This document shows positions 9,481 to 63,558 of a stretch of 64,000 bases of DNA, in pieces; position 1 is the first letter of the stretch; each line of letters opens with the position of its first letter. The stretch is from Octopus bimaculoides (lineage: Eukaryota). The notes beneath the pieces are model-generated. The model worked only from the letters and a program-made list of their open reading frames with translations. It searched no databases and was not told the DNA's origin. The translations under genes were made by a program, and so were the position numbers. The stretch is taken from NCBI RefSeq assembly GCF_001194135.2, contig NC_068981.1:159293077-159357076 (forward strand), given 5' to 3'.

Positions 9481-9692
9481 TTCTACTCTAGGCACAAGGC
9501 CAGAGATTTTGAGAGTGGGGGCCAGTTGATTAAATCGACGATTGTACGAAACTGGTACTTAATTTATCGAATCCTAAAGGATGAATGGCAAAGTCGACGT
9601 CGGCGGAATTTGAACTCAGAACATAAACACATACGAAATACCGCTAAGCATTTCGCCCGGTATGCTAACGTTTCTGCCACATCGCCGCCTTA
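9481..9692 (-). mobile_element. SINE family B, CpG-intact (another - copy at 13470-13648)
   Basis: Reverse-complement match to 3425-3640. Confidence 0.8.
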
Positions 9693-10039
9693 AATAATAT
9701 CATAACCCAAATAGCTAAAAAGTGTGTATGTATCAATTATAAACATTAAAAGGAAGATTACTATTATGTAGAATCAATTTAATACCTCTTCTTTACTTAC
9801 TAAATTAATTAATTATTCAGTGGTTTCTATGAGGTCTAATCAAGCCACTTACATATAGAATATCTAGAAAGGTATACAAACTATCTATAGTATATATATC
9901 TTTCCATATATTCCATATGTAAGTAGCTTGAGTAGTCTTTATAGAAGCCACCAAATAAGCCACTTACATATGGAATATATATATATAAATGAATGTTTAT
10001 GTGTGTGTCTGTGAGTATGCATGTATATATATAAATGAT

Positions 10040-28782: not shown

Positions 28783-28989
28783 TCATGGGTTTGTTTCTGC
28801 TGTAGTAAAATCCATTGACATTGCAGTGGATGTGGTCTGAGAGTTGGGATTCGCTACTGAAGATGTCGATGTTGGAAAAATGGAAAGCGTCATTCCCTGG
28901 AGGTGACTGGTGGAGCTGTCTTCATAGGAATCGTCAATAGGTTCAGACTTAATGAACATCATTTGATCACTTTCAAATGTGTGTGGAAT
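28783..28989 (-). CDS. Terminal coding exon E (IKSEP motif, acidic and Ser/Thr-rich tail)
   Basis: Acceptor ctttattgcttttgcAG, phase 0; IPHTFESDQMMFIKSEPIDDSYEDSSTSH...TAETNP, then TGA TAA. IKSE fits the psi-K-x-E SUMO consensus. Confidence 0.82.
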   Translation of the reverse strand: MPHTFESDQMMFIKSEPIDDSYEDSSTSHLQGMTLSIFPTSTSSVANPNSQTTSTAMSMDFTTAETNP

Positions 28990-30410
28990 CTGCAAAAGCA
29001 ATAAAGTGAACAGGAAATTTAAAATTGGGTTAAAAAGACATAATTAATACTATTATATATATATAATATTATACACACATGCATACGCACACACATATGT
29101 ATGTATATAAATATGAGGGAACATTACTCAATGACATATAGTTTGTAACGTGAATGATTAACAGTTTATGTTGTTGCTATTGCATCAATACAGTTGCTTA
29201 CACCTTGATTCAAGATCAATAATAGTTGTAAAAAGGTGAAAATATAAGAGTTCATATGATGCACATACAAGGAAAGCCTCCCTGAATTGTGGTTGAGAAG
29301 TTGGTCTTTAGTAAAAAAAGAAATCAAAGATTTCAGTAAAACAGAGGCAACAAGATTGCCAATTCCATTTGTAGGCTTTGATTTAGCCAGGATACTCTAC
29401 AGGTGGCAAGAGTTTTAATTTTTAAGTTGTCAGATGTATTTTGATAATGAGATCATGTTATGTCTAACTGGACTTCTAAATGTATATGTGAATATCAGGT
29501 CTTAAAACAATTGGTAGTTTATCCATTATACGCTATGACAGAGTAGGAAAGACAGGCAATAATCTTTGGTTTGACCACTTTTTATTTCACCTTTAGAGCT
29601 ATCCCTAAAATATAGGGAACATCTGTAGTCTTTCAGCTTGTTAGAAATAGCTACCAAGTCTTATTTAGGTCACAACTTACCACCTTTATAAGAGAACACA
29701 TTGAACAATGTAGTCTTAGATATACGATATACTATAATTGGAAAATAGATGGGATGATCACAACTAGAATGCTGTTGATTATAGATCTGTTCAATCAGAG
29801 ATGGTCTGGGGTTAAACAAAAACAACACCATACATAAAATATATTTAAATGTTCTTATAATGAAGAATATATTTCATTACAATCATTTTTTAATGACAAA
29901 AATTGTAATTAAGCATATCTTGTTACTGATGTTTTTATGATTAAAGTTTAGATAGAAGATTATACAAAGAACTAATATTTGAAACTATATTGATTTTTTT
30001 AATGAATTCAATGTAGGCTTAAAAATGAAAAATGAAAAGAATACAATTATGAAAATCCAGTGCTGTATTTGAGACAAAATGAATTATAAAAAATAACAAG
30101 TAAATATCTTGCTTCAGTTTTGAACTATCACTCATAATCTCAAAAAAAAAAATTATTCTTTTAAAAATTAACTTAATGATTTATAAAGTCTTATGGTTAA
30201 AATTATGTCAGTGCAAAGTTACATGTAGAAAGATATTATTGAACTAGAAATGATGTCTCTTTTAAAAGGTCATTATATTATATATTTATTAGTCAAACTG
30301 AAAATATCTAACAGTTGAAGCTATTTATTTCAGCAACAAATTAAAGTCAGACTATAAAGGTCAGTAAAGCAAAATCTATTAAAAGAATAGGGCAACTAGG
30401 AAAGTAATGA

Positions 30411-30464
<54 letters not shown>

Positions 30465-30488
30465 TATTATTATTATTATTATCATTAT

Positions 30489-30731
30489 TGCCTTTGCACA
30501 GCTTCTAACGCTAGAGATGTACTACAGTGTCAGCTGTTCACTACCAGTGAACTAAGGTAACACCACTTATTTTTCAAGCATCTTCTGGCGGATTCGAGCG
30601 GTTCCAAGCAGTGCTGTTTTCTGCACGCATTCCATCCTTATTGCAGCCCCTATTTGTTCCACGTACTTCTCGAGAGTTTTGCTTATCTCTGTTGCTTTTT
30701 GTTCTCCACATGATAACCTTGACCTTGGTAC
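30489..30731 (-). mobile_element. 3' end of a second R4/Dong-clade element, opposite strand
   Basis: Translates KTLEKYVEQIGAAIRMECVQKTALLGTARIRQKMLEK*; 3' UTR ends in a (TAA)n tail that reads (att)n at 30463-30488. Confidence 0.78.
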
Positions 30732-32335
30732 TTAGTAAAATAAAGCTGGGGTACTGACTAAAGGGAAAATCTCAAACAATCAATCACCTCCTCTTCATGG
30801 ATGATTTGAAACTGTATGGCAAGGATGAGACACAAGTGAGTTTCTTGGTGAGCATGGTCTACTGTTTAGTGCTGATATTAGAATAGAATTTGGACTCAAG
30901 AAGTGTAGAATAATCAACCTAAAAAGAGGCAAGGTACAATCTTTAGCAGGGACAGAATTACCAAATAGAGACTTGATTAAACAAATTGAAACAGAAGGCT
31001 ACAAATACCTTGGTGTACTAGAGTTCAATGAAATAATGAGAAGGAAATGAAAGAGCAACTGAGGAAGGCTAAGCGATTTCCAAAGACTAAGGTTGGTGTG
31101 GTGCTCAAAATTGACTGGATGGAATAAAATCCAAGCAGTTAATACATGTGCGGTAACATCACTTTGGTATGGAGTCAAAGTTGTAAAATGGCAAAAGAGA
31201 AAAGTGGTGAAAATGGATATGAAGACCAGAAAAATGTTGATAGTACACAGAGCCTTCCATCCTAAGAGTGACACCAATGGGCTGTATTTGTCCAGAAGAA
31301 AGGGTGGGAGAGGTTTGATCAGTTGCCAGGAAAGCAGAGGAAAACAGCGTAGGGTGGTGTATAAAAAATGCTATAGAGCCATTGTCGAAAGATATGAAGA
31401 AGGCTGCCATCATCAAAACTGAAAATTGTGTAATGAAAGAAAAATTTAAAGAAGAAATGAACACACACAAAAAAAAGAAAATGCATGGAAGGAATAAAAA
31501 AAATGTATGGTGAGTTTGCAAGAGATGTGAATGTCAAGACAGATACAGAGGACCAGTGGCTATGGATGAGGAGAAATGACCTGAAGATAGAGACAGCAGC
31601 AGCTCAAGAACAAGTGTTAAGGACTAACTATGTGAAGTGCAGAATAGACAATGCTGCCAACAGTGACAAATGCAGAAAGTGTGGTGAGATAGATGAGATG
31701 GTAAGACACATCATTAGCAAATGCCTGAAATTGACACAACATGAATACAAAAGTCACCATGACAATATGGCAAGAATGATCCATTGGGAGCTACGTGGAA
31801 ATCATGGCTAACAAAGAGCAAAGATGTGGTATGAGAAGACCCCGGAAGGAGTCACTAAGAATGAGAATTGCAAAATCCTGTGGGATGCAATAATTCAGTG
31901 CAATCACCTGACCAGACATCAGAAGCCGGACATTGTTGTGGTGAATAAAAAAGAAAGAACATGCATGATAATCAACATAGTATGTCCTGGTGACAACAGG
32001 ATCAATGTGAGAGAAGAAGAAAAAATAAACAACTATGATGATTTGAAGTGGAAAATACACAGGTTGTGGTCAATGTGGAGATTAGATGTGATACCAATAG
32101 TAATTGGCACACTTGGAAGTATCAGCACTCAACTATCAACTTGACTGAAAAAATTTGTGCAAGTGTGAAGGTAGAACACCTACAAAAATCAGTATTGCTT
32201 GGAACTACAAGAATTCTTTGCAGGGTTCTCAAAACATGACCAGTAAACAAGTGTCCCCTCAGTCTGCTGGCTGTGGACAGCTGACACTTCCCAATATACC
32301 CAGTAAAATAAGCTGTGACTTTTCATTACATGATA
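30732..32335 (+). mobile_element. 5'-truncated R4/Dong-clade non-LTR retrotransposon (RT-CCHC-RLE), degenerate
   Basis: HLLFMDDLKLYGK (RT), AAQEQVLRTNY, CRKCGE...HIISKC (CCHC), KILWD...KPDIVVVNKKERTCMII (RLE), LQKSVLLGTTRIL; followed by a (GAT)n(AAT)n tail. Confidence 0.88.
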
Positions 32336-32336
32336 T

Positions 32337-32400
<64 letters not shown>

Positions 32401-32418
32401 AATAATAATAAATAAATA

Positions 32419-32992
32419 AATGCCCTGATGCAGTACCAGGCAGTGGCTCTCATGGTTTCTGATCTTAATTGATTGGAAGTGTTATCATGTACGTTGTTTT
32501 GTCTTGGTATAAAAGATGGGCTACAGCAAATATTCTGCTTAATACCACAAATTTGCTTGTCAGTTGTTTGACCTTAACCAGTTGAGCATGTCCCTTGGTG
32601 GCTGACGATATGTGCNNNNNNNNNNNNNNNNNNNNNNNNNNNNNNNNNNNNNNNNNNNNNNNNNNNNNNNNNNNNNNNNNNNNNNNNNNNNNNNNNNNNN
32701 NNNNNNNNNNNNNNNNNNNNNNNNNNNNNNNNNNNNNNNNNNNNNNNNNNNNNNNNNNNNNNNNNNNNNNNNNNNNNNNNNNNNNNNNNNNNNNNNNNNN
32801 NNNNNNNNNNNNNNNNNNNNNNNNNNNNNNNNNNNNNNNNNNNNNNNNNNNNNNNNNNNNNNNNNNNNNNNNNNNNNNNNNNNNNNNNNNNNNCTGGTGT
32901 ACCCTTATCAGACGGGTAGTCATGATGGGTATATTGGGCTTTGTATATTTTACCCCAGTGTCACTTTGATGACATGCACTGCTCTCTCACTC

Positions 32993-32993
<1 letters not shown>
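32419..32993. mobile_element. Family D copy 2 (central gap)
   Basis: atgccctgatgcagtaccaggcagtggctctcatgg...gcactgctctctcactcaataataat. Confidence 0.7.
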
Positions 32994-33048
<55 letters not shown>

Positions 33049-33079
33049 CAACAACAACAATAATAATAATAATAATAAT

Positions 33080-33297
33080 AATGGTTTCAAATTTTGCCAT
33101 GAGAACAGCCATTTTGGAAGAGGGGATGAGTCCATTACATTGACCCCAGTGTTCAACTGGTACTTACTTTATCAACCCCAAAAGGATGAAAGGCAAAGTT
33201 GACCTCGGCAGAATTTGAACTCAAAATGCTAAGACAGATGAAACGAGTTAAGCATTTTGTACAGCATGCTAACGATTCTGCCAGCTCACTGCCTTTA

Positions 33298-33358
<61 letters not shown>

Positions 33359-33570
33359 TCAAATTTTGGTACAGGGCCAGCAGTTTTTTGAGGGGAGGGG
33401 ACAAGTTGATTACATCAAACCCAGCACAGAACTAGTTCTTATTTCATCAACCTTGAAAAGATTAAGGGCAAAGGCAACCCCAAGGGAATTTGAATACAGA
33501 ATGTGAAGATGAATGAAATACCATATTAAGCTTTTTGTCCAATGCAATAATAATTGTCAGCTTGCCACCT
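33080..33570 (-). mobile_element. Tandem SINE family B copies (more at 34200-34350, 35705-35890, 35905-36125)
   Basis: Each begins on + with a variant of ttcaaattttggcacaagg after TAA-rich sequence. Confidence 0.72.
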
Positions 33571-33700
33571 TTCTAATAATGATGATAAATTCAAATTTAT
33601 AATAATATAAGAAAATATAATAAATTTTACTTTAATTTTGTAAGATAAATGACTGCATTAAAAGCTTAAGGCCAGTTCCAACCTTTGGCAGAGAAATCTG

Positions 33701-33734
<34 letters not shown>

Positions 33735-34424
33735 GTAATTCATGAACTAAATGTGAGATACAAGCCAAAGACAAAAAGTTACTAAATTTGTTGAAATAAT
33801 TTACTGTCTTCATGATAGGAAGAAGACAGTAGCTATATCACATGAATGGGTATGTTTTTCTTTTCTTTTTTAAGATTTAGGAATATACCAGCTTCTATAT
33901 ACATCTGAAAAAAGTAAAAAAAAAAAAAAAAAAAAAAAANNNNNNNNNNAAAAAAAAAAAAAAAAAGAAAAAATAACTGAATATCAGGAACTGGACTAAT
34001 TGACTATAATGCAGTAGATTGGTAGAAGGTCTATGTCAGCCATTCTGTGTCCTTAAACAAGTCTCATTATTCTACTTACTTTGCATTGTCAGAAATAAAC
34101 ATGTTTAATACCAATCTTAGGAGGATTGTCTAGTTTTGTAAAACTTTGTTGTAACATTGATTTGTAAATAATCAAAATCTACACAGCCAAAACATTTATA
34201 ATGGTTTCAAATTTTGGCACAAGGTAAACAATTTAGTAGATAAGTCTATTACACTGACTGCAGTAGCATTTGAACTCAGAATGTAAAGCTGGAAGAAATG
34301 CTGCTAAGTATGTTGTCTGGCATGCTAATGGTTCTGCCAGCTCACTGTCCAAACTATTAATATAGTATTTATAATAATAAGAAAAAAATTTTTTTAAACA
34401 CAAAGTAATCCTAAAATTCTTCAA

Positions 34425-34695
34425 GTGCCGATGGACTGGCTCCTGCGCGGGTGGCATGTAAAATACACCATTTCAAGCGTGGCCGTCGCCAGTACCACCT
34501 GACTGGCCCTCGTGCCAGTGGCACATAAAGCACCCACTACACTCTCGGAGTGGTTGGCGTTAGGAAGGGCATCCAGCTGTAGAAACTCTGCCAAATCAAA
34601 TTGGAGCCTGGTGTCGCCTCCTGGTCCACCAGTCCTCAGTCAAATTATCCAACCCATGCTAGCATGGAAAGTGGACGTTAAACGACGACGACGAA
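34425..34695 (+). mobile_element. Young RTE 3' tail copy (others at 48930-49080, 53475-53725, 61283-61445)
   Basis: CpG-intact ggagtggttggcgttaggaagggcatccagctgtagaaactctgccaaatc...ggacgttaaacgacga. Confidence 0.72.
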
Positions 34696-36172
34696 CTCCA
34701 TATGACAATAGTCTTGATCTTTGAGAAAATGTTAAAATCAGTCACTCTAGAAACAACTGTAAAGCTCCAAGACTCTGGTTTACAAATCTGCTGTCTTCTC
34801 ACTGAACTTCTTCTGCTGTTATTAAAGTAAACACAGATTCCTTGAGCTGGCTCATCTTGTGTCAGTTGTACTTAGGTCTCACTGATACATTCATCATTCC
34901 ACTTCTCATTTCTCATAAGGTTCACCTTATTCACTGGTTTCTACTCTACTCATTACCATTAACCATTAACCATTACCATTAACCATTTGCCCCCAACCCT
35001 TTCTCCTTAAAATGTTGGTCCTCTGATGCTCTCTCCTAGCTCAAGTTTTTCCTGCTGTTATTGGCTTACAATTTTTCAAGTAGGACATCAATTGAGTAGA
35101 TCTCACAGCTCTCAGGGAGCCACCAAAGGTCATCAGTACAACTCCTTATTCCAGACAAACTCATTAAAAAATAAATCTTAAAACTGAAATTAATTTATTC
35201 TTGTAAAAAAGAGATAGTTAAGTAATGGTTTAATGATGAAAGAGAATTCAACGTCAATGGAAATTAAAAGATTTCTTTAGATATTCAAATGGATCAATCA
35301 TTCATTTTAGTAACTAATCAACTTCTGGAATCTTTAATGTGAATTTATTTGGAATATCAATAATTTTTACTGAATTTTGTCAAGAGTATGTGTCTCTATA
35401 GAATTCATTCAAAGATATATCCAGTATATAAATTGATGTATGTTTTACAAATTAGATATGCAAATATCTCATAAACTGTTTTACATAAATATGTAAAATG
35501 ATATGTTTGCATATCACAGAAAAGTAAAATAAGAACTTGATTTGAATAAATCATGAACTTATGGTAAACACACCAATGCACATCAAATCAAAACTAATAC
35601 AAAGTAGAATTGAAAATCCAGCTGCAAAATAATTGTGAATTACCATGGAGATAAAGAAAATAAAAAAGGAAATTAATAGAAGACTAGATTTGGTTAAATT
35701 TAATAATGGTTTCAAATTTTGGCACAAGGTCAGCAACTTCAGGGGAGGGGGTTAAGTTGATTACGTTGACCCCAGTGCTCAATTAGTACTTATCAATCCC
35801 AGCAGCATTTGAACTCAGAATGTAAAAGCAGGTGAAATGCTGCTAAGCATTTTGCCCAGTGCGCTAACAATTCTGTCAGCTTGCTGCCATAAGTTAAATC
35901 CAATACTGACTTCTAACACTGACACAAGGACACAAATTTCTTGGGAAGACATAGTCAATTAAATCACATTTCAATACTGGGCTGGTACTTCATTTTATCA
36001 CCCACAGAAGGGTGAAAGATAAAGTTAATCATTGCAACATTTGAACTCAGAATATAAGGGTTGAAACTAAATACTGCAAAGCATTATGTTTAACACACTA
36101 CTGATTCAGTCAGTCCACTGCCCTTGTTAAATTCAACAAATATTAAAAAGAAGAAAGAAAAGAAATTCTTAC

Positions 36173-36215
36173 CTGTCTTGTGAAGTTTTTCATAAAATCT
36201 ACACCAAAATATACT
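36173..36215 (-). CDS. Coding exon D (43 nt); end of repeat 2
   Basis: 1 nt + 14 codons VYFGVDFMKNFTRQ; strong donor CAG|GTAAGA, phase 0, matching the terminal exon. Confidence 0.85.
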
Positions 36216-36609
36216 GTAGTGAAAAGGTTAAGGAATCCAATACAATTTATAAACGAACATTACAAGAACCATTAAAATAATGGAATGATTTCAATATATT
36301 AAATTGAAATAAAAACAAAATGTTGTCATCTTGTAAATATCAAATCACTTGTTCATTTGTTTTGCATCTGTTTTTCCCATGCTGGTATGGGCAGGATGAA
36401 TATACTATTCAGGCATTGTTTTATAGTCAGATACAGTTCTTCGTGCTAACCCTTTCTTGCTTTTCAAGTAAGGAATTTTTTACTGTACATAGCTTCAAAG
36501 GTACAAAGCATGTAGGTGATCTATAGACAGGAGAAATACCAACAGAATGTCACATAAATGGCCATGCATGCATGCGAGTGCCCATGTGCACACACACTCT
36601 ACGATAAGT

Positions 36610-36845
36610 TTCTTTCAGTTTCTTATTTCTTTACTGCCCGCAAGGGGCTACACACAGAGGGGACAAACAAATGGATTAAGTTGATTAGATCGACCCCAGT
36701 GCGTAACTGGTACTTAATTTATCGACCCCGAAAGGATGAACGGCAAAGTCGACCTCGGCGGAATTTGAACTCAGAACGTAGCAGCAAACGAAATACCGCA
36801 AAGCATTTCGCCCGGTGGGGTAACATTTCTGCTAGCTCGCCGCCT
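36610..36845 (-). mobile_element. SINE family B, young copy with variant tail, inside U12 intron 2
   Basis: CpG-intact body; tail tttgtcccctctgtgtgtagccccttgcgggcagtaaagaaataag. Confidence 0.8.
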
Positions 36846-37119
36846 TCAGTTTCTTTCAGTTTCTGTCTACCAAATCCACTCACAAGGCTTTGATTGATCT
36901 GAGATGCTTCAGTAGAAAACACTTGCCCAAGGTTTCACACAGTGAGACTGAACCCGAAACCATGTGGTTGAGAAGCCATCTTCTTAACCTTACAATCAGG
37001 CTTATACTCCTTGATAAGAAATGTTTTAATGCAATAAAGACCTAAAATTTAATGTTTCTCTCTGGTCCCAGTCAAACATAAAATCTGTTGTCAAAAATTC
37101 CCATCTATCTGGCTCAAAA

Positions 37120-37155
<36 letters not shown>

Positions 37156-37325
37156 TCTCTCTCAGAGATCTTTTATTTCCTCAACTATTCTCAACTCCTT
37201 TGTACATCTTTTAAACAAGACAAAAACTCTGTAATGCTGAATAAGTTAAAATTCTTTCTTCAGAAAAATGCAAACAAGAGACAAAACAGTTTTCTTCATT
37301 TAAATCATAATTTATGGAAAGTAGA

Positions 37326-37634
37326 TAATGGTTCCCAAAGTGGGCGGTATTGCCCCCTGGGGGCAGTGGAAAGTTCCAAGGGGGCATTGAAGAAAAGTGG
37401 GGTGATAATGGGGTAGTGATTCATGTAAAAAGTGGGACAATAATGGCGTAGTGATTCATGTAAAAACAACAAAATAATGGGTTCATTAGGTTAAGTTTCA
37501 TTTGTGAAATACAGTTGCTTTCAATTTGATTCAGAAAGAGGTCTATGTTTGTGATGGTTAGTTGGGGTGGGGGTGCTAGGAATGTGACCTGGGTGTCAAG
37601 GGGGCAGCAGCCTGAAAATGTTTAGGAACCACTG
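37326..37634. mobile_element. hAT (Charlie-like) MITE inside U12 intron 2
   Basis: Termini taatggttcccaaa / tttaggaaccactg; flanks aagtagat / atctagat resemble the NTCTAGAN target. Confidence 0.62.
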
Positions 37635-37909
37635 ATCTAGATTCACAGTTTTTCAGAGTCAATGATACACTTTTATTATATAAAAAATCTCCAGTATACC
37701 TGGACTATAACAGCACTATAGATACATCAGATGTAAACCTGTTAGCATATAACTGTCAATCAGTTTTACATAGTGGCACAATGCATTATATAAACAAAGT
37801 ATATTTGAGAGAAGACAGATAGGTAAATACAGAACCAGTATGAACATGGAAACTCTTCATATTATCAAATAAAATATAATTTCACAATAGCTAAATATAG
37901 AAAGGATAT

Positions 37910-38084
37910 GTCTTAAACTTCCCTTTTCTCTTCATATGAATACTAGGGAACAAAAACCGCATTGCTCGATTGCACTGCACACCCCAATATTGTACACCAG
38001 GTTCCTCAATTTTCTGTCCTAATAATTGAAGGACCTCATCACGTGAGATGCCCATGTCAAAGTCACCAGTCCAGAAAACAAGTT
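37910..38084 (-). CDS. Coding exon C; winged-helix-like repeat 2
   Basis: Acceptor tttattttatAG; 175 nt (2 nt + 57 codons + 2 nt): LVFWTGDFDMGISRDEVLQLLGQKIEEPGVQYWGVQCNRAMRFLFPSIHMKRKGKFK. Ends AC|ATATCCTTT. Confidence 0.9.
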
Positions 38085-38438
38085 CTATAAAATAAATCAC
38101 AATATATTAGAAAACAATTTTAAATATGTACTCAGTGTGTGTACATGCATAGGTATGAAGAGGTATTTACATATCTGTAGTCAGTCCAACTTTATATATG
38201 AAAATAACAGTGAAACATTTTCTAAAATGCATAATAGAATGTAAAGCTATTACCAGAATATATCATACTGAAGACATCTTTTGAGGGTAATTTAACCTGG
38301 CATAATGCATCCACATTACAGGTTACTGAATACGGATAGAAATGGCAGCTTTGATTTGAAATGAAATAACTCAACCAGGGATCAAACCTACTCACATATT
38401 CAGCAAGCAAAGAGCTTATATTTATGCCAAAACACTTA

Positions 38439-38472
<34 letters not shown>

Positions 38473-38596
38473 TGTGTGCATACATGCGTACATGTGTGTG
38501 CAGCCCCTCAGCTTACCAGCCCTGGTCAAACCAGCCAACCCATGCCAGCATGGACAATGAATGTTAAATGATGATGATATATCTAATCTGATCTAA

Positions 38597-40253
38597 TCTA
38601 ATAATATATAAAACAGATGTGTGCATATTCACTTTTCACGCGAAAATGGCTTCACCAATTGCTTCATATTTGTGATGCATGAATAATTTGACCTCAGACA
38701 AATAATAGGCTGTTCATTTGATTTTTTTTATAAAAAATTATTAAAAATAAAAAAATATTGCTTTTTTATATTACATTCACGTCTTTGAAAGTTTTTAAAA
38801 TATTTACTTTCAGTTTTCTAGCGTCAGTGACATTACATATCTCTTTATGTGTATCTCTCTATCCATCTCTATCTCTTGTAACATATCTCTCTATCTATAT
38901 CTCTTGTTTTCACTTTCATTTTTCAAACATTCTTTTCACTTTCAGTTTTCATACGCCACTGTTTAACTTCCATGTTATTGTTTTCACTGTAAGTCTAAGT
39001 TTCCAATCGCTATTTACAAACAAACAACGACAAATTACTGACAGAAAGAAGTTCACAATTACTGATGTAAGTAATTTCATAATTTACTGACAGAAGTATC
39101 TTCATAAATTTCATTTCAATCCCTATGGTTTTGTGTTTTTCTGTTGTTGACAGTTTCTTTCTGGTTCCTTCGATACTGGCTCTTAGGTTCACTGAGTGAC
39201 AAATTTCACTTCAACCCGTACAATACTTTATTTTCCATTAAAATTTCTTATTTTCTTTCTGCTCGTCATATTGAGAAACATAATTTCTATTACCAAGTTA
39301 TTTTCATTGTTTACTATCTTCTGCACTTATGTATTTCTGTATACATGTATAACCATACCTAGAAGGAAAGTGTCAATTTTGTCGGCATAATTACAGATTT
39401 CTGCCAACCCCCATTTTTGGATGATCATAACTTTCAGAAAAATGGAAGATGATGCAAACTGGGATGCCACTCTTACAGAGGCACAAATGTGCAAGTCTCC
39501 TATGCAACTGAGAAATCTCTTCTTCATCATGCAGCTTGATGGGTGAGAATGTCTTTATTCCAAGGATACATCTCATCTCAAATGATCTCTCCTTTCAGTT
39601 CAAGAGACTGCAGTTTCCTGTTAAACTTAGCTTTGTAATGTCTATCAACAAAGCACAAGGTCAATCTCTAAAGGTGGTAGGACTTAACCTCCTTCAACCT
39701 TGTCTCTCACATGGTCAGCTGTATGTTGGATGTTCTAGAGTTGGAGATGAAAAGAACCTCTACATTCTCAGTGATAAACATGGCAAGACAGAAAACAGTG
39801 TATGAAGAAGCACTTACATGAATAGTAGGTCCATATTATATACAGAAGTGTAAAACCATTGAGTGTTAAAGTATTACTATTACACTTTCCCTTTTCGACT
39901 GTCATGCATGAATGTATATCTGTGTGTATAAAAGTGAAACAATAATGTGATATATTCGCTGTCTGTTTGTGTGTGTGTACTCTATGCACAGCCTTTCATT
40001 GGTTATAATCTGTACCTGTTTTTTGGTTACAAAATAATTTAGACAAATGTGTATTTACTTTATATACATATGTGAGTTGAAAACTTTCTTTTCCCATTTC
40101 ACTTAATGTCTATGTTCCATGTTGGGATGGGTTGTAGAGTCACATAAAAAGTTGGTATCTCAGCTACTAGCAGTTGAGACCTGCATAAACTAGACGGCAT
40201 TTTAAAATTTCATTATTTTCTTTAACCTGGGCAACGCCGAGTATTTCTGCTAG
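38597..40253 (+). mobile_element. Internally deleted Helitron with both termini
   Basis: 5' a|TCTAATAATATATAAAA. 3' degenerate hairpin cctgggcaacgccgag followed by tatttctgCTAG|t (40250-40253). Coding remnants EDDANWDATLTEAQ...QLRNLF (~39440-39530) and PIF1-type helicase C-terminus FKRLQFPVKLSFVMSINKAQGQSL...SHGQLYVGCSRV (39536-39805). Confidence 0.85.
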
Positions 40254-41507
40254 TATACATATACATATACATATATATATATATATATATATATTCCATC
40301 AAAAACTATGTATTTACTTCAGAATAATTCTATAGTTTATGGAAGCATGAATACATTAATTATATATAAGAAAGAAAGAAGGGTATATTTTAAGGGATAA
40401 AAGATTTATAAGGACCTATGATGATTAATGGGTGATGATGACAGTGATTTATCTCTAGACATATTTTTATGAAAATCAACAGGGAAAATATAGTTTCATT
40501 AAAAAATCTTATTGGTTGAATTAGCTTTTCATTTTTCAAGGTTCAATGATAAATGTCTAAAGAAGAGAGAGAGTTAAAGCCAATTAGCACAATTTTAACT
40601 CTAGTCATAAGTACTGAGTTGTGTCTGAAAGCAAAACTTTGTTATTCTTCATATTTCAATTAAACTGCACCAATTAAATAGAGTTTGATTACATTCAATC
40701 TACCCTACCATCCTAACCAAATCATTTTCAGAATTACTGAAGCCATTGTTATTGTTTCCCCCTCTTTAAACTAACTACAAAACTAACACAGGCAACAAAA
40801 TACCTCTTTCCTTAATTAAGGTGATTAAGGAAGAATTATTGGCACCCTCGATTTAGTATATTCATTCTATGTTATGCACACTAGTATTTTAAGCTAATGC
40901 TGTTTCAACTGTGTACATCAATTTAATTCTAGCCTGGTTGGCTTCCGCACAAATCAACAAATGTTTTTTTTTACCACTTTCTATATTGAAGCAAGCATTT
41001 TGTGCTTGACTCAGAGTGTCCAGAGTATTCATCACTGAGGAGACCAACCCAGGTTGAAACACTGTGTCTGATGATCCACTGGCATCATGAGCAAAGCTCC
41101 ATGTTTTTTTTAACAAACAAATCACTTTGAAAAATTTCTCTGAGACAAATTATTACAATTATTGTCATTTCCATCTGTGTGTACATATAAGCATATATAT
41201 CACTGTATCACTTTATCGACCTGATTATTGGATGTTGTTATAAACAAACGTTTCTTCATATTGTTAGATATCATGATATCTATACAGATAGATGTATATA
41301 TTCATGTAAATGTATGCACATGCACACTCCAATATTTTAATTTACTGTGGCTTCAAGTGTGTATATTTGATACAGCATGGTATTAGTGCTAGGAAACAAA
41401 TCAGTAAGTTTTTTAATTCGTAAGTCTGATGTGGCTTTTATTTTGTCGAAATTTTTTTTCTAACAAAGGAGAAAATGAAAATAGAAATTTAAGAAAATAA
41501 GAATATA

Positions 41508-41546
<39 letters not shown>

Positions 41547-41550
41547 GTAC

Positions 41551-41684
41551 CTGGAAGAAATTGCAGAATCTTCTCCAGATCTTGAGAAAGATCTCTCAGT
41601 GGCTGATAAGTCACATTCTCAGAATCGCTTAGTTCTTCTTGTTCTTGCAATTGCTCTATAAGAGCCACACCAAAATAGTACGTT
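41551..41684 (-). CDS. Coding exon B; end of repeat 1 plus acidic linker
   Basis: 134 nt (1 nt + 44 codons + 1 nt): TYYFGVALIEQLQEQEELSDSENVTYQPLRDLSQDLEKILQFLP. Donor CCAG|GTACTA (phase 1) matches the phase of exon C. Confidence 0.88.
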
Positions 41685-42453
41685 GTCAGCACGTTAAGGA
41701 GAATTAGATCAATAATCATTGGGAAAAAAATAGTGGAATCAAGAAAGAAGGTTTTGATATAAAAGATTCAAACATCAATAATGTCCCTGATCCCACGGTG
41801 TTTTTCTTTTTTAGCTCTTGTAACTTATCTCTTCCTGCAATGCTTCTTTAGATAATAGCACTTAACAAAATCAATCATCTACATGTAAAACTATGATCAT
41901 GTTTTGAATATAAATTAGTCCAAAGAACGTACTACAAACAGAAATTTCTGGAACACTGAGCCTGAACCATAAACTTCATTATGGCAATGCAGCAGTAGTG
42001 GTAGTGGTGGTGAGGATCATTTAGAAAATTAGGTCAACTGACCAAGTTGTAGCTGTGACCATTATTGTAGGAAACTATGGTATTTATACATCATTTATGC
42101 ATCAGCAATGTTAAAGATAACATCAAGGGACAGTTAATAAGTGTCAAATTAAATACCAAGCTTAAAAATTTAATTCGTGGAATCATTAGAGGAATAAATG
42201 ACACAAAAATATATAGACAAATACATCCATTTTCTTTGCAACTATCACAGAAGCATACATGTAATTCAGTCAGTATAGGTCCAAGTATGGCAGCATGGTA
42301 AGAAGTTTGCTTCCCAACCACATGGTTCTGGGTTGAGTCCCACTGCATGGTACCTTGGGTAAGTGTCTTCTACTATAGCTTTGAGCCAACCAAAGCCTTG
42401 TGAATGGATTTGGTAGACGGAAACTGAAAGAAGCCCTTCATATATAATATATG

Positions 42454-42507
<54 letters not shown>

Positions 42508-43129
42508 ATAATGTAAGTGTATATTTTTGATAGAATGCTGGTGCATTAAAAGAGAATTTAGGCATAGGAAGAATTAGATGCAAAGTGCAAGAGAGAAGAC
42601 TATGGTGATTTGGTCATGTGATGCGGATGGATGCTGACAGGTTCATAAAAAAAAGTGTCAGTCTCTCAAAGTGTCTGAAACATGTGGAAGAGGGAAACCC
42701 AGGAAGACAGGGGACAAAGTACTGAAGGACAACCTCGGGATGCTGAACCTTTCATAGACAGATAGATATATATGTGTGTCTATATGTCTGTTTTTGCTCA
42801 CCTACCACTGCTTGACAACTGGTGTTGGTGTTTATTTCCCTGTAACTTAGCAGTTTGGCAAAAGAGAAAGAAAGAATAAATACCAAGCTAAAAAAAAAAG
42901 TATTGGAATCAATTCATTCAGCAAAAAATTTTACAAAGCAGCACCTCAGCACATATGCACACACACACACATGGCTGTGTTGCAAAAAGTTTGCTTCCGA
43001 GCCATATGGTTCCTGGTTCAGTCCTCCATGACACCTGAAGCAAATGTCTTCTACTACAGCCCTGGGCCAACCAAAGTGTTCTGAGTGAATTTAGTAGACA
43101 GAAACTGAAAGAAACCCGAGTGTAAGTGT

Positions 43130-43918
43130 CCTGAGAGAAATGTTGGACATAAGAAGCATCAGATGTGGTGTGCAAGAGAGATGACTGTGCTGGTACGGCC
43201 ATGTATTGTGTATGGATGAGGAGATCTGTATGAAGAAGTGTCACTCCCTAAGAGTGGAAGGAACCCGTGGAAGAAGGAGACCTAAGAAGACATGGGACGA
43301 GGTGGTGAAGCATGACCCTTGAACGTTGGGCCTCACAGAGGCAATGACGAAAGACCGAGACCTCTGAAGATATGTTGACCTTTGGATTGTCGGGCAACAT
43401 GCCATGCTTGAGGAGACCTATTGAGTCAAGTAAATCAAAATCAAAATCTAAATCAAAACCAAGTCACAATCAAATGGAAATTGTAGTTGTGACTGATGCC
43501 AGTGCCACCTGACTGGCTCCCATGCTGGTGGCACGCAATAAGCACCATTCATGTGTGGGTCATTGCCAGTGCTGCCTGACTGGCTCCCCATGCCAGTGGC
43601 ACATATAAACACCGTCTGAACCTGGTCGATGCCAGCCCCCTCACCCCGACTGGCTCCTGTGGTGGTGGCACATAAAAAGCACATTCTGAGCATGGTAGAT
43701 GCCAGTGCCACCTGACTGCTTCCCATGCAGGTGCCACATAAAAAGCACCCACTACACTCTCGGAGTGTTTGGCGTTAGAAAAGGCATCCAGCTGTAGAAA
43801 CATTACCAGATCAGATTGGGGCCTGGTGAGACCTCCTGGCTTGCCAGTCTCCAGTCAAACCGCCCAGTCCATGCCAGCATGGGAAATGGACGTTAAATGA
43901 TGATGATGATGATGATGA
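43130..43918 (+). mobile_element. RTE-clade LINE 3' end (ORF2 C-terminus, tandem-repeat 3' UTR, (ATG)n tail)
   Basis: Degenerate WYGHV...VEGTRGRRRPKKTWDEVVKHD; repeated gccagtgcc-ctgactggctcc-gtggcac units; ttggcgttagaaaaggcatccagctgtagaaa tail motif. Confidence 0.8.
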
Positions 43919-45433
43919 ATGTCATGATAAAAATATAAACTAATTCTTCTGTTTTGTTCAGCCTGTGTGTGTGTGCGTGCGTGTCTTTATACTTTCTGGT
44001 AATTGCTCAGCTACAGATAGTGTTACTGCTGTCATTTTGCCTGTCAGCAAATAATGCACTGTCCTTGTGCCTTCAAAGATATGAAATAAGACATCCTCTA
44101 CTTGATAATTAGGGAAGGGTTAATGACAGGAAGTAGGACATCTGGCTGTAAAACAATACTTCAACTATCTATCTGGAAAATCGATTTAAAAGCAAACTAA
44201 TGAATACACACACACACATGCCCTGCTGCATGGGTAATGTCAGTGTGCATGCACAACATGTGAATGACTTAAGAAGAAAACTGGGTGTAAGAGGCATCAG
44301 ATGCTGTGTGCAAAAGAGAAGACTGCACTGGTTTGGTCATGTGATACAAAAATTAATAAGGTAACTAGCAATTTCAACAACCTGTAGCTACTATATACAA
44401 AACATGTTTGTGCAGACACAGAGTGAATAGGATGGACTGACATTAGACACGCCCAAAACCCTGTCAAAGCTATGATATATGGGAGCCTATTCCTGTTCAT
44501 AGATCACATTGAAGTAATAAAGTTTCAACCTACAAGTGTACATATGAAATGCAATACAGTGCAAAGTATCAAAAACAAAAGTAGAATCCCTGAACAACAG
44601 GTGGTAATATACACACCTGAAGTGGACACAATGCAAACAGCTTTCTGATACCATGAAACAATCAACAGATTTCAGCAATAGAGTAACAAAAGAATTTCTT
44701 AAACTGCATTTAGGTGGTGGAACAGGTGCCCTAGATACAACAGACACAAAGCCACGTACTTCAGCGCACAAGGTTACTTCAACTGTTGAACTCAGGATAT
44801 TGACTCCATACACAACATCCTAATATTAAATGAACTATACTTTTAAATATCTGAGGGTTTTTTCCATGACTAACTAGAGTAAATGAGCTCCTGTCTCTAC
44901 CTGAAAGATCTTGTCACATGCAAGGAGGTGATATGCAGAGAACATACAGAAACAGATCAGCTAACAAACACATCAGATGTAGAACTATACATATTAAAAT
45001 ATGTCTGCTTTTGTTTTGATAAGAAAGTAAGAAACTACATGGAGCTGCTATGTATTTGCATGAAGATATAATATCAAAAGCAGTGTTGCCACACTCAAAC
45101 ACTGTTTGTGACACAAAGAAAAATTTAACATGGTTATGCAAAAAACATAACACACAACACATTGCCCACAAGATATCTTAAACAATAGCACAAAATTTGA
45201 GGAAAGTTTTAGACAGGAGCAGCAATAACTAGTTTGAATCAACATGCCAATGAATTCATATTGAGTGGCTTTAATATTTCAAACCTCAAGTAGACAAAAG
45301 GTTATATTCTCTTGAGAAAACAACAGCATGACTGTAGGTCAGCTGTTTCTGCTTAACCTCATGGGCATGATGTCCAAATATGTTACTATATAAGAGATCC
45401 CTGATGTTCAATTAATGCAAAAATGATCCACAA

Positions 45434-45862
45434 TATTTTGTTGTATCTTGGGAGGGTCATTATACCAACAATAAATACATGCACTGGTTCTATTTCACTT
45501 CTGTATTATATGTCAATTGGTTAATTATCTTACCATTTAACTAGCTGATATTTTTGATTAATCATTTAGTTCACTGATCAATCAGTTAGGTTTGTCAAAG
45601 TCCTTTTGCTACCATTCACAATCTCATCAATGACATTCCCTCTTTACTCCATGTCTGCTTCACCTGCTGAGGTTGCAAATGGTAACAAAGAGACTTTGAC
45701 AAACTTAACTGATTTACTGATTAGCTGAATGATCATAAAACAACTGATTAGTAAATTGGTTAAATAGTTAACCAATTGTCAAATAAAAAACAAAGAAGTG
45801 AAATATAACTAGTGCATGTATTTCCTATTGACATAATGACCCTCCCAAGATACAGCAAAATA
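45434..45862. repeat. Long inverted repeat (~190-bp arms, 48-bp spacer)
   Basis: 45434-45623 aligns along its length with the reverse complement of 45672-45862; a related single arm lies at ~53728-53860. Confidence 0.82.
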
Positions 45863-46350
45863 GGTCTCAACCCACAATTTCACAACAAGATTCTTGCAAA
45901 CCAAACACAAAAATGAAAATGATCCTCAATATGTCTTGCATAATATTTATTCTCTGACTATATTGTAGTAAAATTGATAATGTTTGGTCCAAAGAAACTT
46001 TTGGCTCAGCACCTAACAAAAATGCGCTCAATCATGTCTAACAAATATCAACAAGGTTTAATGAAAACCAATTCAACAGAATCTTGATTCATGTATGTGA
46101 CTGTAAATTCTATACACTTAAGAATGTTTCAAATATCTTTATAATTTGTGTTAGAGAATAAAAAAATGACACTAAGATGCATTTAAAATTACAATAATAC
46201 AAATATGCACAAGAGCAACTGTACACACACATACATGCATGTGCACATATTAATAAGATTATTCATAAACTAATAAACAATAGGTATTAATATCAATCTT
46301 AAATTTTTTTATTATTTTTTTTTTTATTCAATGTGGAAGAAAAAGGATAT

Positions 46351-46519
46351 TTCTTGAACTTCCCTTTCCTCTGAGCCATACTGCTAGGAAACTCTTCTCT
46401 CACAGCCTTGTTACATGCTGGCCCCCAATGAACCATTTCTGGAATGTTCAGCAGCATACTAATTTTCTGAAGAAGTAGGTCACGTGATACATAACCTTTA
46501 GCACAGCCAACTAATAACT
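46351..46519 (-). CDS. Coding exon A (most upstream confidently placed) of a spliced gene; winged-helix-like repeat 1
   Basis: Acceptor ttattattttcAG; 169 nt (2 nt + 55 codons + 2 nt): LLVGCAKGYVSRDLLLQKISMLLNIPEMVHWGPACNKAVREEFPSSMAQRKGKFK. Ends AA|ATATCCTTTTT (U12 donor). Homologous to exon C. Confidence 0.88.
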
Positions 46520-60299: not shown

Positions 60300-61265
60300 N
60301 NNNNNNNNNNNNNNNNNNNNNNNNNNNNNNNNNNNNNNNNNNNNNNNNNNNNNNNNNNNNNNNNNNNNNNNNNNNNNNNNNNNNNNNNNNNNNNNNNNNN
60401 NNNNNNNNNNNNNNNNNNNNNNNNNNNNNNNNNNNNNNNNNNNNNNNNNNNNNNNNNNNNNNNNNNNNNNNNNNNNNNNNNNNNNNNNNNNNNNNNNNNN
60501 NNNNNNNNNNNNNNNNNNNNNNNNNNNNNNNNNNNNNNNNNNNNNNNNNNNNNNNNNNNNNNNNNNNNNNNNNNNNNNNNNNNNNNNNNNNNNNNNNNNN
60601 NNNNNNNNNNNNNNNNNNNNNNNNNNNNNNNNNNNNNNNNNNNNNNNNNNNNNNNNNNNNNNNNNNNNNNNNNNNNNNNNNNNNNNNNNNNNNNNNNNNN
60701 NNNNNNNNNNNNNNNNNNNNNNNNNNNNNNNNNNNNNNNNNNNNNNNNNNNNNNNNNNNNNNNNNNNNNNNNNNNNNNNNNNNNNNNNNNNNNNNNNNNN
60801 NNNNNNNNNNNNNNNNNNNNNNNNNNNNNNNNNNNNNNNNNNNNNNNNNNNNNNNNNNNNNNNNNNNNNNNNNNNNNNNNNNNNNNNNNNNNNNNNNNNN
60901 NNNNNNNNNNNNNNNNNNNNNNNNNNNNNNNNNNNNNNNNNNNNNNNNNNNNNNNNNNNNNNNNNNNNNNNNNNNNNNNNNNNNNNNNNNNNNNNNNNNN
61001 NNNNNNNNNNNNNNNNNNNNNNNNNNNNNNNNNNNNNNNNNNNNNNNNNNNNNNNNNNNNNNNNNNNNNNNNNNNNNNNNNNNNNNNNNNNNNNNNNNNN
61101 NNNNNNNNNNNNNNNNNNNNNNNNNNNNNNNNNNNNNNNNNNNNNNNNNNNNNNNNNNNNNNNNNNNNNNNNNNNNNNNNNNNNNNNNNNNNNNNNNNNN
61201 NNNNNNNNNNNNNNNNNNNNNNNNNNNNNNNNNNNNNNNNNNNNNNNNNNNNNNNNNNNNNNNNN
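60300..61265. other. Largest assembly gap (one of many N runs, most bordered by microsatellites)
   Basis: N run between (TA)n tracts. Confidence 0.99.
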
Positions 61266-62280: not shown

Positions 62281-63558
62281 CTGTGTCATCCCATAAATAA
62301 TGTGGTTTTCAATTGCATGAACTAAAAGTCAGAGGGGGATGGGATAAACTACCTGCATCAACTTGCTATAAAAGCAGGTAGTAATTTTACCTTGTCCTTA
62401 TTCTTAGTGCAAGTTCTGAAGAGTGCAGTTCGATTTTAAGTTATTTTTTTCAAAGCAATAATGGAAGTGACAAAGGAGCATATTTGGCATATTTTGCTTT
62501 ATGAGTTCAATAAAGGCAACAATGCAATGGAAAATACAAGGAATATTAATGCAGTATATGGGGATCAGACGATAAGTGTAAGCCAGTGTCAACGGTGGTT
62601 CCAGAAATCCCATGCCAGAAGCTACAGCACAAAAGATGAGCTTTATTTTGGAAGATCTGTAGAGCTTGACAAGGACATCCTGGAAACTTTGGTGGAACAA
62701 AATCCCATCATAACTGTTGAGGAACTAGCAGAGAAGCTTAGATTTGATCATTCAACCATTCATCAACACCTGCTTACCATCGGAAAAGTTAGCAAATTGG
62801 GTCAGTAGGTTCTTCGCAAACTTTTCGAGTCTAATCGTGAGCAGAGAGTGAAGGTGTGCTCTTCTTTGCTGTCATGTCTCATGAACAAACCTTTTCTGGA
62901 CTGAATAGTGGCTTGTGACGAGAAATGGGTTCTCTATGAAAATGTCAAGCACTGCAAACAGTGGGTAGGGAAAGGAGAAACATGGGCACTCCAGGCTAAA
63001 GAAGGTCTTGACCCACATAAGGTGTTGTTATCTGTTTGGTGGGATATGAAAGGTTTAGTCCACTTTGAACTTTTAAACCCAAACCAAACGATAACAAAGG
63101 AGATCTACTGTGAGCAGCTTGAATGGCTTAAGTCTGTGCAAGAAGCAAAATAACCATATTTGGTTTCAAGATGAAAGGTGTTCTTCCATTAGGATAATGC
63201 TCAGCCACATACAGCAAGGATGACATTCCAAAGGCTGGAGCAGTTTGAATGGGAAATGATGCCCCACCCACCATATTCACCGGACATTGCCCCATCTGAT
63301 TATCATTCATTCTGCAGTCTTCAAAACCATTTGGACGAAAAAAATATGAATTCTGTAGACAAGGCCAGAACAGTAGTGGAAAAGTATTTTTCATCATGGA
63401 CAAATGAATTTTTGAAGAGGAGTCTTGCAAGTCTACCGGATAAATGGTGTTGAAGAAAATGAAGGAGAGTATATTTTACATTAAAAAAGAACTTTGTTTA
63501 TCTTAATTCTGAAAAATAAAAGTAGATTAAAAACTGCAATATTTAGGGGATGATGCAA
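62281..63558 (+). mobile_element. Full-length inactive mariner (DD34D) transposon
   Basis: Imperfect TIRs (ctgtgtcatcccataaat / atttaggggatgatgcaa) flanked by TA at 62279-80 and 63559-60; 1278 bp. Confidence 0.93.
62461..63484 (+). pseudogene. mariner transposase pseudogene
   Basis: HTH region (SVSQCQRWFQK), ACDEKWVLYEN, KVLLSVWWD, H*DNAQPH, HPPYSPDIAPSDY with D34D spacing; several in-frame stops. Confidence 0.92.

What the first reader, a model, noticed from the sequence alone, without database searches (positions are those of the whole stretch)
36173..46519. Two AT-AC minor-spliceosome introns at the same codon position of a duplicated domain in one gene
Seen: both introns begin ATATCCTTT (46350, 37909), carry a TCCTTAAC branch site (41693-41700, 36227-36235) within about a dozen nt of a terminal AC, and are phase 2. 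Removing them gives homologous in-frame junctions RKGKFKK^TYYFGV and RKGKFKT^VYFGV. Each domain-bearing exon also starts in phase 1 after a normal AG. Established: U12 introns are rare, the AT-AC subtype is a minority of them, and GT-AG gene finders miss them. Inference: an exon pair plus its U12 intron was duplicated inside the gene and both minor introns were kept while the protein repeats diverged, so the product depends twice on the minor spliceosome.
Basis: partly seen in the sequence, partly recalled or inferred. Interest (0 to 1): 0.92.

Follow-up and report, generated by a model that had tools for sequence, protein, structure and literature searches.

The report
Twin AT-AC minor introns, octopus gene
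An octopus gene for a probable DNA-binding protein carries two rare minor-spliceosome (AT-AC) introns at the same spot in its two copies of a winged-helix domain; this is a real, old, conserved feature, but it is already captured in RefSeq gene models and is an ordinary example of known intron evolution.

Summary
On the minus strand, two introns start with ATATCCTTT (46350, 37909). Each has TCCTTAAC eight bases before a terminal AC, and each is in phase 2 at the same alignment column of two homologous domain units (44% identity). The spliced window sequence reproduces exactly the C-terminal 243 residues of Octopus bimaculoides RefSeq protein XP_052828171.1.

One correction: intron B ends at AC 36220-36219 (…KFKT|TVYFGV), not 36217-36216. 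At intron A the equivalent downstream AC is used in RefSeq isoform X2.

Orthologous loci from other molluscs keep a U12-type intron at both sites. At site A it is AT-AC in some loci and GT-AG U12-type in others. One unidentified lineage has a U2-type intron at A and none at B, and one Mya-like bivalve locus also lacks B. Both domain copies are also present in the brachiopod Lingula.

The domain is a winged helix closest to the RFX type. The rest of the protein carries C2H2/matrin-like zinc fingers.

An ancient intragenic duplication of a two-exon unit together with its U12 intron is well supported. Verdict: a new member of a known kind, of moderate interest.

The parts
46351..46519 (-). Exon A1 (169 nt): first part of winged-helix unit A. 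It starts in phase 1 after ttattttcAG and ends ...AAG AA|.
   Evidence: tblastn of XP_029643444.1 (P0013) residues 843-899 is 100% identical.
41685..46350 (-). U12-type AT-AC intron A (4666 nt, phase 2). The 5' splice site ATATCCTTT is at 46350-46342, the branch site TCCTTAAC at 41700-41693, and the terminal AC at 41686-41685. An alternative in-frame AC at 41683-41682 corresponds to RefSeq isoform X2.
   Evidence: The orthologous introns are seen.
41551..41684 (-). Exon A2 (134 nt): the second wing strand of unit A plus an acidic linker (TYYFGVALIEQLQEQEE...ILQFLP). It ends in phase 1 before GTACTA.
38085..41550 (-). Ordinary GT-AG intron between the two units (phase 1). It contains transposon debris and a hammerhead type I motif on the opposite strand.
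37910..38084 (-). Exon B1 (175 nt): first part of winged-helix unit B. It starts in phase 1 after ttttatAG and ends ...AAG AC|.
36219..37909 (-). U12-type AT-AC intron B (1691 nt, phase 2). The 5' splice site ATATCCTTT is at 37909-37901, the branch site TTCCTTAAC at 36235-36227, and the terminal AC at 36220-36219.
36173..36218 (-). Exon B2 (46 nt): TVYFGVDFMKNFTRQ. It ends in phase 0 before GTAAGA.
28990..36172 (-). Ordinary GT-AG intron (7183 nt, phase 0) containing two N gaps.
28783..28989 (-). Terminal coding exon (IPHTFESD...TTAETNP, stop TGA at 28785-28783). Its sequence marks the window as O. bimaculoides-like, because O. sinensis has TTSETNP.

Best explanation
The window holds the 3' part of a single-copy Octopus bimaculoides gene (RefSeq XP_052828171.1, an uninformative 'DDB_G0283357' name). 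The protein has N-terminal C2H2/matrin-like zinc fingers and two tandem RFX-like winged-helix domains at the C-terminus.

Each winged-helix unit is split at the start of its second wing strand by a phase-2 AT-AC intron with perfect U12-type signals. These are the 5' splice site ATATCCTTT, which is recognised by U11/U6atac, and the branch site TCCTTAAC, which is recognised by U12, lying 8 nt before the terminal AC. Both introns are therefore removed by the minor spliceosome, and the neighbouring introns by the major one.

The pair arose when a genomic block (exon 1, U12 intron, exon 2, bounded by phase-1 introns) was tandemly duplicated inside the gene before molluscs and brachiopods diverged. 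Since then the two introns have followed the known fates of U12 introns in different lineages: they were kept as AT-AC, switched to GT-AG U12-type, converted to U2-type, or lost.

What is shown: the signals, phases, homology, conservation, and agreement with annotated and transcript-derived proteins. What is inferred: actual U12 dependence, the direction of the changes, and DNA binding by the domains.
For: - Signals and phases were read from the sequence.
- The spliced window CDS equals the last 243 aa of P0064 = XP_052828171.1.
- Orthologous genomic loci keep the U12 signals at both sites while the rest of each intron differs:
  - L001/L008: A is ATATCCTTG...TTCCTTGAC+8...AC, and B starts ATATCCTTT.
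  - L025: both introns are AT-AC, with ATATCCTTT and TCCTTGAC / TCCTTAAT.
  - L007 (Pomacea-like): A is GTATCCTTC...CCTTAAC...CAG, and B is ATATCCTTT...TCCTTAAC...CAC.
  - L020: A is GTATCCTTT...TCCTTAAT...AG, and B starts ATATCCTTT.
  - L009, L010 and L023 have AT-AC signals at A, L018 has an AT-AC intron at B, and L021/22/24 start GTATCC at A.
- About 30 independent genomic ORF fragments read through the junction as K[KTAS]YP (= [AG]TATCC) at both sites.
- Full-length proteins on roughly 3-5 kb Logan contigs, which I take to be assembled transcripts, show the spliced junctions KKTYFF / KTTVYQ and similar (P0018, P0022, P0023).
- Duplication: the units are 44% identical, share the intron column and phase, and share a phase-1 Glu boundary. 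Unit A is 303 nt. A-A identity is 58% against 36% for A-B, and Lingula has both units.
- Fold: the AF2 model has pLDDT 80 with two helix-helix-helix-hairpin units. The best PDB match is the RFX5 DNA-binding domain (probability 1.00, TM 0.74 normalised to the target, rmsd 2.9), followed by other winged helices. hhalign against RFX1+RFX5 gives P 1.3e-4.
- The literature documents subtype switching, U12-to-U2 conversion and loss of U12 introns (PMC2831892), and enrichment of minor introns in molluscs and Lingula (PMC10639083).
Against: - No RNA-seq from this species could be examined here, so the junctions rest on annotation and on comparison with other species.
- No formal intronIC or PWM score was computed.
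- The distance from the branch adenosine to the 3' end of the intron is 9-10 nt. From memory this is at the short end of the range I recall for U12 introns, and the downstream AC (12-13 nt) may compete with it.
- Pfam RFX_DNA_binding is far below threshold (13 bits against 27), and profile searches of the PDB by sequence found nothing. 'RFX-like' is therefore a statement about fold and profile similarity, not established family membership.
- Genomic DNA of Lingula was not available, so the intron type at the time of the duplication is inferred.
Confidence: 0.88

Rival explanations
1. The domain was duplicated without an intron, or with a U2 intron, and the two U12 introns arose later and independently at the same site in each copy.
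For: One lineage (L011-L015, L019) has a U2-type intron at site A and no intron at site B. If that lineage were basal, it could be read as the ancestral state.
Against: U12 intron gain is regarded as extremely rare and conversion as essentially U12-to-U2 (PMC2831892, PMC6865273). Two independent gains at the identical column and phase, with the same subtype and the same branch-to-3' spacing, would be needed. The shared phase-1 Glu-Leu boundary upstream of both units points to duplication at the level of genomic DNA.
Confidence: 0.04
2. The AT-AC signals are coincidental and the transcripts are spliced by the major spliceosome at cryptic GT-AG sites. An example is the UniProt model A0A0L8I311, which joins GT 37943 to AG 36214. 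Alternatively, the exons are not joined at all.
For: Such models exist in older annotations (P0085, P0069, P0065). An AG lies at 36215-36214.
Against: The cryptic model deletes 14 conserved residues (SIHMKRKGKFKTTV) that are present in every orthologue. The O. vulgaris model frameshifts. There is no AG in the last ~40 nt before exon A2. RefSeq and the transcript-derived proteins give the AT-AC junctions, and the U12 signals are conserved across distant molluscs.
Confidence: 0.03
3. Intron B mainly uses the reader's acceptor (AC 36217-36216, giving KFKT|VYFGV) rather than AC 36220-36219.
For: That AC is in frame and lies 12 nt from the branch adenosine, a typical U12 spacing (from memory). The analogous downstream AC of intron A is annotated as isoform X2 in two octopus species.
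Against: No annotated isoform or orthologue lacks the second Thr. All read [TS]T[VM]. The upstream AC gives an ungapped A/B alignment and identical spacing in both introns.
Confidence: 0.1

Closest known systems
U12-type (minor-spliceosome) introns, AT-AC subtype
   Same: The 5' splice site ATATCCTTT and the branch site TCCTTAAC, close to a terminal AC, are a perfect match. The introns are not in phase 0. They lie among ordinary GT-AG introns. They are conserved over hundreds of millions of years. Orthologues show subtype switching, U12-to-U2 conversion and loss, as described by Burge 1998 and Lin 2010 (PMC2831892).
   Different: Nothing differs mechanistically. The host gene is a lophotrochozoan-restricted, unnamed gene rather than one of the ancient families that contain minor introns.
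Voltage-gated Na+ and Ca2+ channel alpha-subunit genes (SCN, CACNA1)
   Same: These genes have internally repeated domains, and most of them carry two U12-type introns (PMC2831892, PMC6865273, citing Wu and Krainer 1999).
   Different: Here the two introns sit at exactly the same column and phase of two adjacent small repeats, so the duplication origin is directly readable. I could not check whether the channel introns occupy homologous repeat positions, because Wu and Krainer 1999 is not held.
RFX-type winged-helix DNA-binding domain (RFX1-8; Pfam PF02257)
   Same: The best structural match of the model is the RFX5 DNA-binding domain. The two share the pattern ...[FC][GN]K.[IV]R..FP...R[RK]G......Y[YF][YF]G[VL] (hhalign P 1.3e-4).
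   Different: The match to the Pfam model is below threshold. The domain is present as a tandem pair after C2H2/matrin-like fingers. There are no RFX dimerisation or B/C domains. Binding to an X-box is untested.
Tandem exon or domain duplication as a source of new introns
   Same: A symmetric-phase exon block was duplicated in tandem, which copied its internal intron.
   Different: The copied intron is of the U12 type. That makes this a simple, readable route by which the number of U12 introns in a gene can rise.

Membership tests
U12-type intron (AT-AC subtype) | 5' splice site matching /[AG]TATCCTT | tested here: met
   ATATCCTTT is at 46350-46342 and at 37909-37901.
U12-type intron (AT-AC subtype) | Branch site TCCTTAAC-like, close to the 3' splice site, with no need for a polypyrimidine tract | tested here: met
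   TCCTTAAC is at 41700-41693 and 36234-36227. In each case it is followed by 8 nt that end in AC.
U12-type intron (AT-AC subtype) | AT...AC termini giving an in-frame, conserved protein junction | tested here: met
   The spliced CDS equals the XP_052828171.1 C-terminus. The acceptor of intron B was corrected to 36220-36219.
U12-type intron (AT-AC subtype) | Signals conserved at the orthologous site in other species | tested here: met
   [AG]TATCCT is present at both sites in more than 10 independent loci, and the branch sites are conserved.
U12-type intron (AT-AC subtype) | High probability from a trained classifier (intronIC or a PWM) | not tested
U12-type intron (AT-AC subtype) | Excision depends on U11/U12/U4atac/U6atac | not testable with these tools
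   This needs a knock-down or an in-vitro splicing assay.
Intragenic tandem duplication of an exon block | Homologous adjacent units with the same internal intron position and phase and symmetric outer phases | tested here: met
   The units are 44% identical. Both internal introns are in phase 2 at the same column. Both units start in phase 1 inside a Glu codon. Unit A is 303 nt.
Intragenic tandem duplication of an exon block | Units orthologous across species (A with A, B with B) | tested here: met
   A-A identity is 58%, B-B 53% and A-B 36%. Lingula has both units.
RFX DNA-binding domain (PF02257) | Match to the Pfam model above the gathering score | tested here: not met
   The octopus protein gives no hit. 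Two orthologues give 13 bits against a cutoff of 27.
RFX DNA-binding domain (PF02257) | Winged-helix fold closest to RFX structures | tested here: met
   Foldseek top hit is 8zjr_M (RFX5) with probability 1.00, TM 0.74 (normalised to the target) and rmsd 2.9. The model has pLDDT 80.
RFX DNA-binding domain (PF02257) | Profile-level sequence homology | tested here: inconclusive
   hhalign gives probability 54% and P 1.3e-4 over 52 columns. A profile search of PDB sequences found nothing.

The most novel reading that the evidence does not exclude
This gene would be a clean, datable example of U12-intron gain by intragenic duplication in a lineage-restricted (lophotrochozoan) transcription-factor family. 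Both DNA-binding wings would be gated by the minor spliceosome. The AC-N-AC tandem acceptors created by the adjacent Thr codon would give regulated wing isoforms with or without that Thr. It would therefore be a natural system for studying how young genes acquire and multiply minor introns.
Probability: 0.25. Interest if true: 0.5.

Novelty: new member of a known kind. Interest (0 to 1): 0.36.

Why it matters
Minor introns are rare, and their gain is considered exceptional with an unclear mechanism (PMC6865273, PMC2831892). This locus shows directly how a gene can go from one U12 intron to two, by duplicating an exon block. Within a single gene family its orthologues then display all the classical fates: retention, the AT-AC to GT-AG switch, conversion to U2-type, and loss.

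There is also a practical side. Several published mollusc annotations are truncated, split or frameshifted exactly at these introns, so the locus is a useful test case for gene finders.

Finally, it defines an uncharacterised protein family (zinc fingers plus a tandem RFX-like winged helix) whose current RefSeq names ('serine/threonine-protein kinase DDB_G...') are misleading.

Tried and rejected
- **Domain identification by sequence.** A Pfam scan of the two spliced units gave no hit. PDB sequence searches with a single sequence and with a profile gave nothing useful.
- **Upstream exon.** I looked for the upstream zinc-finger exon in the window by tblastn with orthologous ORFs and with the full protein. 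It is absent, so the intron upstream of A1 exceeds 17 kb or the exon lies outside the window or in an N gap.
- **Further domain copies.** A search for more copies of the domain in the window found only two.
- **Motif enrichment.** Enrichment alone is not significant. The extra GTATCCTT at 39569-39562 and the extra TCCTTAAC at 31623-31616 are not attached to any exon and are treated as chance.
- **More distant homologues.** A profile search for relatives such as vertebrate or arthropod proteins found none beyond molluscs, a brachiopod and unnamed contigs.
- **Taxon of the divergent lineage.** The taxon of the lineage with the U2-converted and lost introns (JAAUX*/JAAUY* contigs, P0053/59/61) could not be identified.
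- **Literature.** Wu and Krainer 1999 is not held in the library.
- **Kinase reading.** I considered and rejected the idea that the gene is a kinase, as its RefSeq name says. There is no kinase domain, and the name reflects low-complexity similarity.
Full report
**What is in the sequence.** The gene lies on the minus strand.

- Exon A1 (46519..46351) follows a normal acceptor (ttattttcAG), starts in phase 1 and ends ...AAG AA|.
- The next bases are ATATCCTTT (46350-46342).
- 4.6 kb downstream, TCCTTAAC (41700-41693) is followed by gtgctgAC. Exon A2 starts at 41684 and gives ...RKGKFKK|TYYFGVALIEQ....
- Exon A2 ends in phase 1 at 41551.
- Exon B1 (38084..37910) follows ttttatAG, also starts in phase 1, and ends ...AAG AC| before ATATCCTTT (37909-37901).
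- TTCCTTAAC lies at 36235-36227.
- The two units are 44% identical over 62 residues (E 2e-16).
- No further copy exists in the window.

**Is it more than chance?** The bare motif counts are not. ATATCCTTT occurs twice against 1.1 expected, and TCCTTAAC three times against 1.9. The placement is what counts. The only two ATATCCTTT in both strands of 64 kb sit at the same codon position of two homologous exons. Two of the three TCCTTAAC sit immediately before the two homologous continuation exons. The third TCCTTAAC (31623-31616) and a lone GTATCCTT (39569-39562) are not attached to any exon.

**Which gene.** A full HMMER scan with the spliced 173-residue region found a 1085-aa Octopus sinensis protein that is 100% identical over the query. 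Cluster look-ups name it XP_029643444.1, and name the O. bimaculoides orthologue XP_052828171.1 / XP_014791294.1.

Joining 46519-46351, 41684-41551, 38084-37910, 36218-36173 and 28989-28783 reproduces the last 243 residues of the O. bimaculoides protein exactly. This includes the species-specific ...TTAETNP end. The upstream zinc-finger exon is not in the window.

**Correction of junction B.** RefSeq, the UniProt fragment A0A0L8I3H3 and every orthologue read KFKT-T-VYFGV. Intron B therefore ends at AC 36220-36219, not at 36217-36216.

With the corrected junction the two repeats align without a gap, and both introns have TCCTTAAC followed by exactly 8 nt. At intron A the analogous downstream AC (41683-41682, inside Thr ACG) is used in RefSeq isoform X2 of both octopus species (KFKKYYFGV).

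**Comparative evidence.** Genomic contigs from other animals were fetched through ORF fragments and a pattern scan.

| Locus | Site A | Site B |
|---|---|---|
| L001/L008 | AT-AC | starts ATATCCTTT |
| L025 (Pinctada-like) | AT-AC | AT-AC |
| L007 (Pomacea-like) | GTATCCTTC...CCTTAAC...CAG (GT-AG U12-type) | AT-AC |
| L020 | GT-AG U12-type | starts ATATCCTTT |
| L009, L010 | AT-AC | not covered |
| L023 | starts ATATCCTTT | not covered |
| L021/22, L024 | starts GTATCC | not covered |
| L018 | not covered | AT-AC |

- About thirty unrelated ORF fragments read through the junction as K[KTAS]-Y-P, which is the translation of [AG]TATCC.
- Full-length proteins on roughly 3-5 kb Logan contigs, which I take to be assembled transcripts, show the spliced junctions.
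- One unidentified lineage (L011-L015, L019) has a U2-type intron at site A. In L012 it is GTGAGT...T10CAG, 138 nt long, at the same position and phase. That lineage has no intron at site B.
- A Mya-like bivalve locus (L017) also lacks intron B.
- These are the known fates of U12 introns: subtype switch, conversion to U2-type, and loss (PMC2831892).

**Origin.** Both units start inside a Glu codon in phase 1, followed by Leu. Both carry the U12 intron in the same column and phase. Unit A is 303 nt, so it is phase-symmetric.

Across ten species A units are 58% identical to one another but only 36% identical to B units. The brachiopod Lingula has both units. A single tandem duplication of the block 'exon, U12 intron, exon' before the mollusc-brachiopod split is the simplest account. 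Independent gain of two U12 introns at the same site is very unlikely, given how rare U12 gain is held to be (PMC2831892, PMC6865273).

**What the domain is.**
- Pfam finds nothing significant. Two orthologues give sub-threshold RFX_DNA_binding hits.
- An AlphaFold model built on ten orthologues (pLDDT 80) shows two helix-helix-helix-hairpin units joined by a disordered acidic linker.
- Its best PDB match is the RFX5 DNA-binding domain (probability 1.00, TM 0.74 on the target, rmsd 2.9). Other winged helices follow.
- hhalign of the twenty units against RFX1+RFX5 gives P 1.3e-4.
- The U12 intron falls at the start of the second wing strand.
- The N-terminal part has C2H2/matrin-like fingers.
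- The protein is therefore most likely a DNA-binding factor. This is inferred, not shown.
- The RefSeq 'kinase' names are artefacts of low-complexity sequence.

**Consequence.** Retention of intron A adds 20 codons and then a stop. Retention of intron B adds 6 codons and then a stop. A full-length product with both wings therefore needs two minor-spliceosome events.

**Annotation.** RefSeq has the junctions right, and O. sinensis was part of a pan-eukaryotic intronIC survey (PMC10639083). The introns are therefore implicitly catalogued, though I found no description of them. Other annotations break at exactly these introns:
- O. vulgaris CAI9716326 frameshifts into exon A2.
- UniProt A0A0L8I321 stops before exon A1.
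- UniProt A0A0L8I311 starts inside intron A and uses a cryptic GT-AG that deletes 14 conserved residues at site B.
- Models from Lottia, Sinanodonta and Pinctada end or start at intron A.

**Verdict.** It is a new member of a known kind. It is a tidy, ancient example of U12 introns multiplied by intragenic duplication, but not a new mechanism. Interest is moderate.

Noticed in passing
window 41029-41074 (+): Rfam Hammerhead type I ribozyme match (36.8 bits against a gathering score of 34, E 1.3e-5). It lies inside the ordinary intron between exons A2 and B1, antisense to the gene. It is probably part of a retrozyme or Penelope-like repeat.
   Followed up: no
window 62461-63453 (+): Decayed mariner/Mos1-type transposase split over three frames (HTH_48 E 1.5e-17, Transposase_1 E 1.1e-20), upstream of exon A1.
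   Followed up: partly
window 39536-39805 (+): ORF fragment resembling the C-terminus of a PIF1/Helitron-type helicase (weak Pfam helicase hit, E 0.003), inside the A2-B1 intron. The lone GTATCCTT at 39569-39562 (-) lies within it and is a chance match.
   Followed up: partly
window 2696-2902 (-), 3619-3795 (-), 9526-9693 (+), 36558-36893 (+) and others: Many short ORFs share the peptide NWYLIYRPRKDERQSRPRRNLNSE. This indicates a dispersed repeat family (SINE- or TE-like) scattered through the window, including inside U12 intron B.
   Followed up: no
window 41550-41545 (-): The ordinary intron between the two units has a weak donor (G|GTACTA), although it is the junction used in RefSeq.
   Followed up: no
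window 41683-41682 and 36217-36216 (-): In both introns, the Thr codon (ACN) that follows the junction creates a second in-frame AC 3 nt downstream. At intron A this AC is annotated as isoform X2 in two octopus species (lacking the Thr). The arrangement recurs in orthologues (L001, L007, L025).
   Followed up: partly
L012 3850-4830: In the lineage with a U2-type intron at site A and none at site B, domain B carries a different intron inside its first helix (ARDTVLQ|GTGAGG...CCAG|VLGRR). The taxon is unknown (contigs JAAUX*/JAAUY*).
   Followed up: partly
RefSeq XP_029643444.1 / XP_052828171.1 (P0013, P0064): The product names 'probable serine/threonine-protein kinase DDB_G0282963' and 'uncharacterized protein DDB_G0283357' are misleading. 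Pfam finds no kinase domain, only zinc-finger-like hits and low-complexity Q/N/S tracts.
   Followed up: yes
window, 14 N runs (e.g. 4464-5008, 60300-61265, 32616-32893): The assembly has 4659 N bases. Two of the gaps lie in the last intron of the gene, and none touches an exon or a U12 signal.
   Followed up: yes
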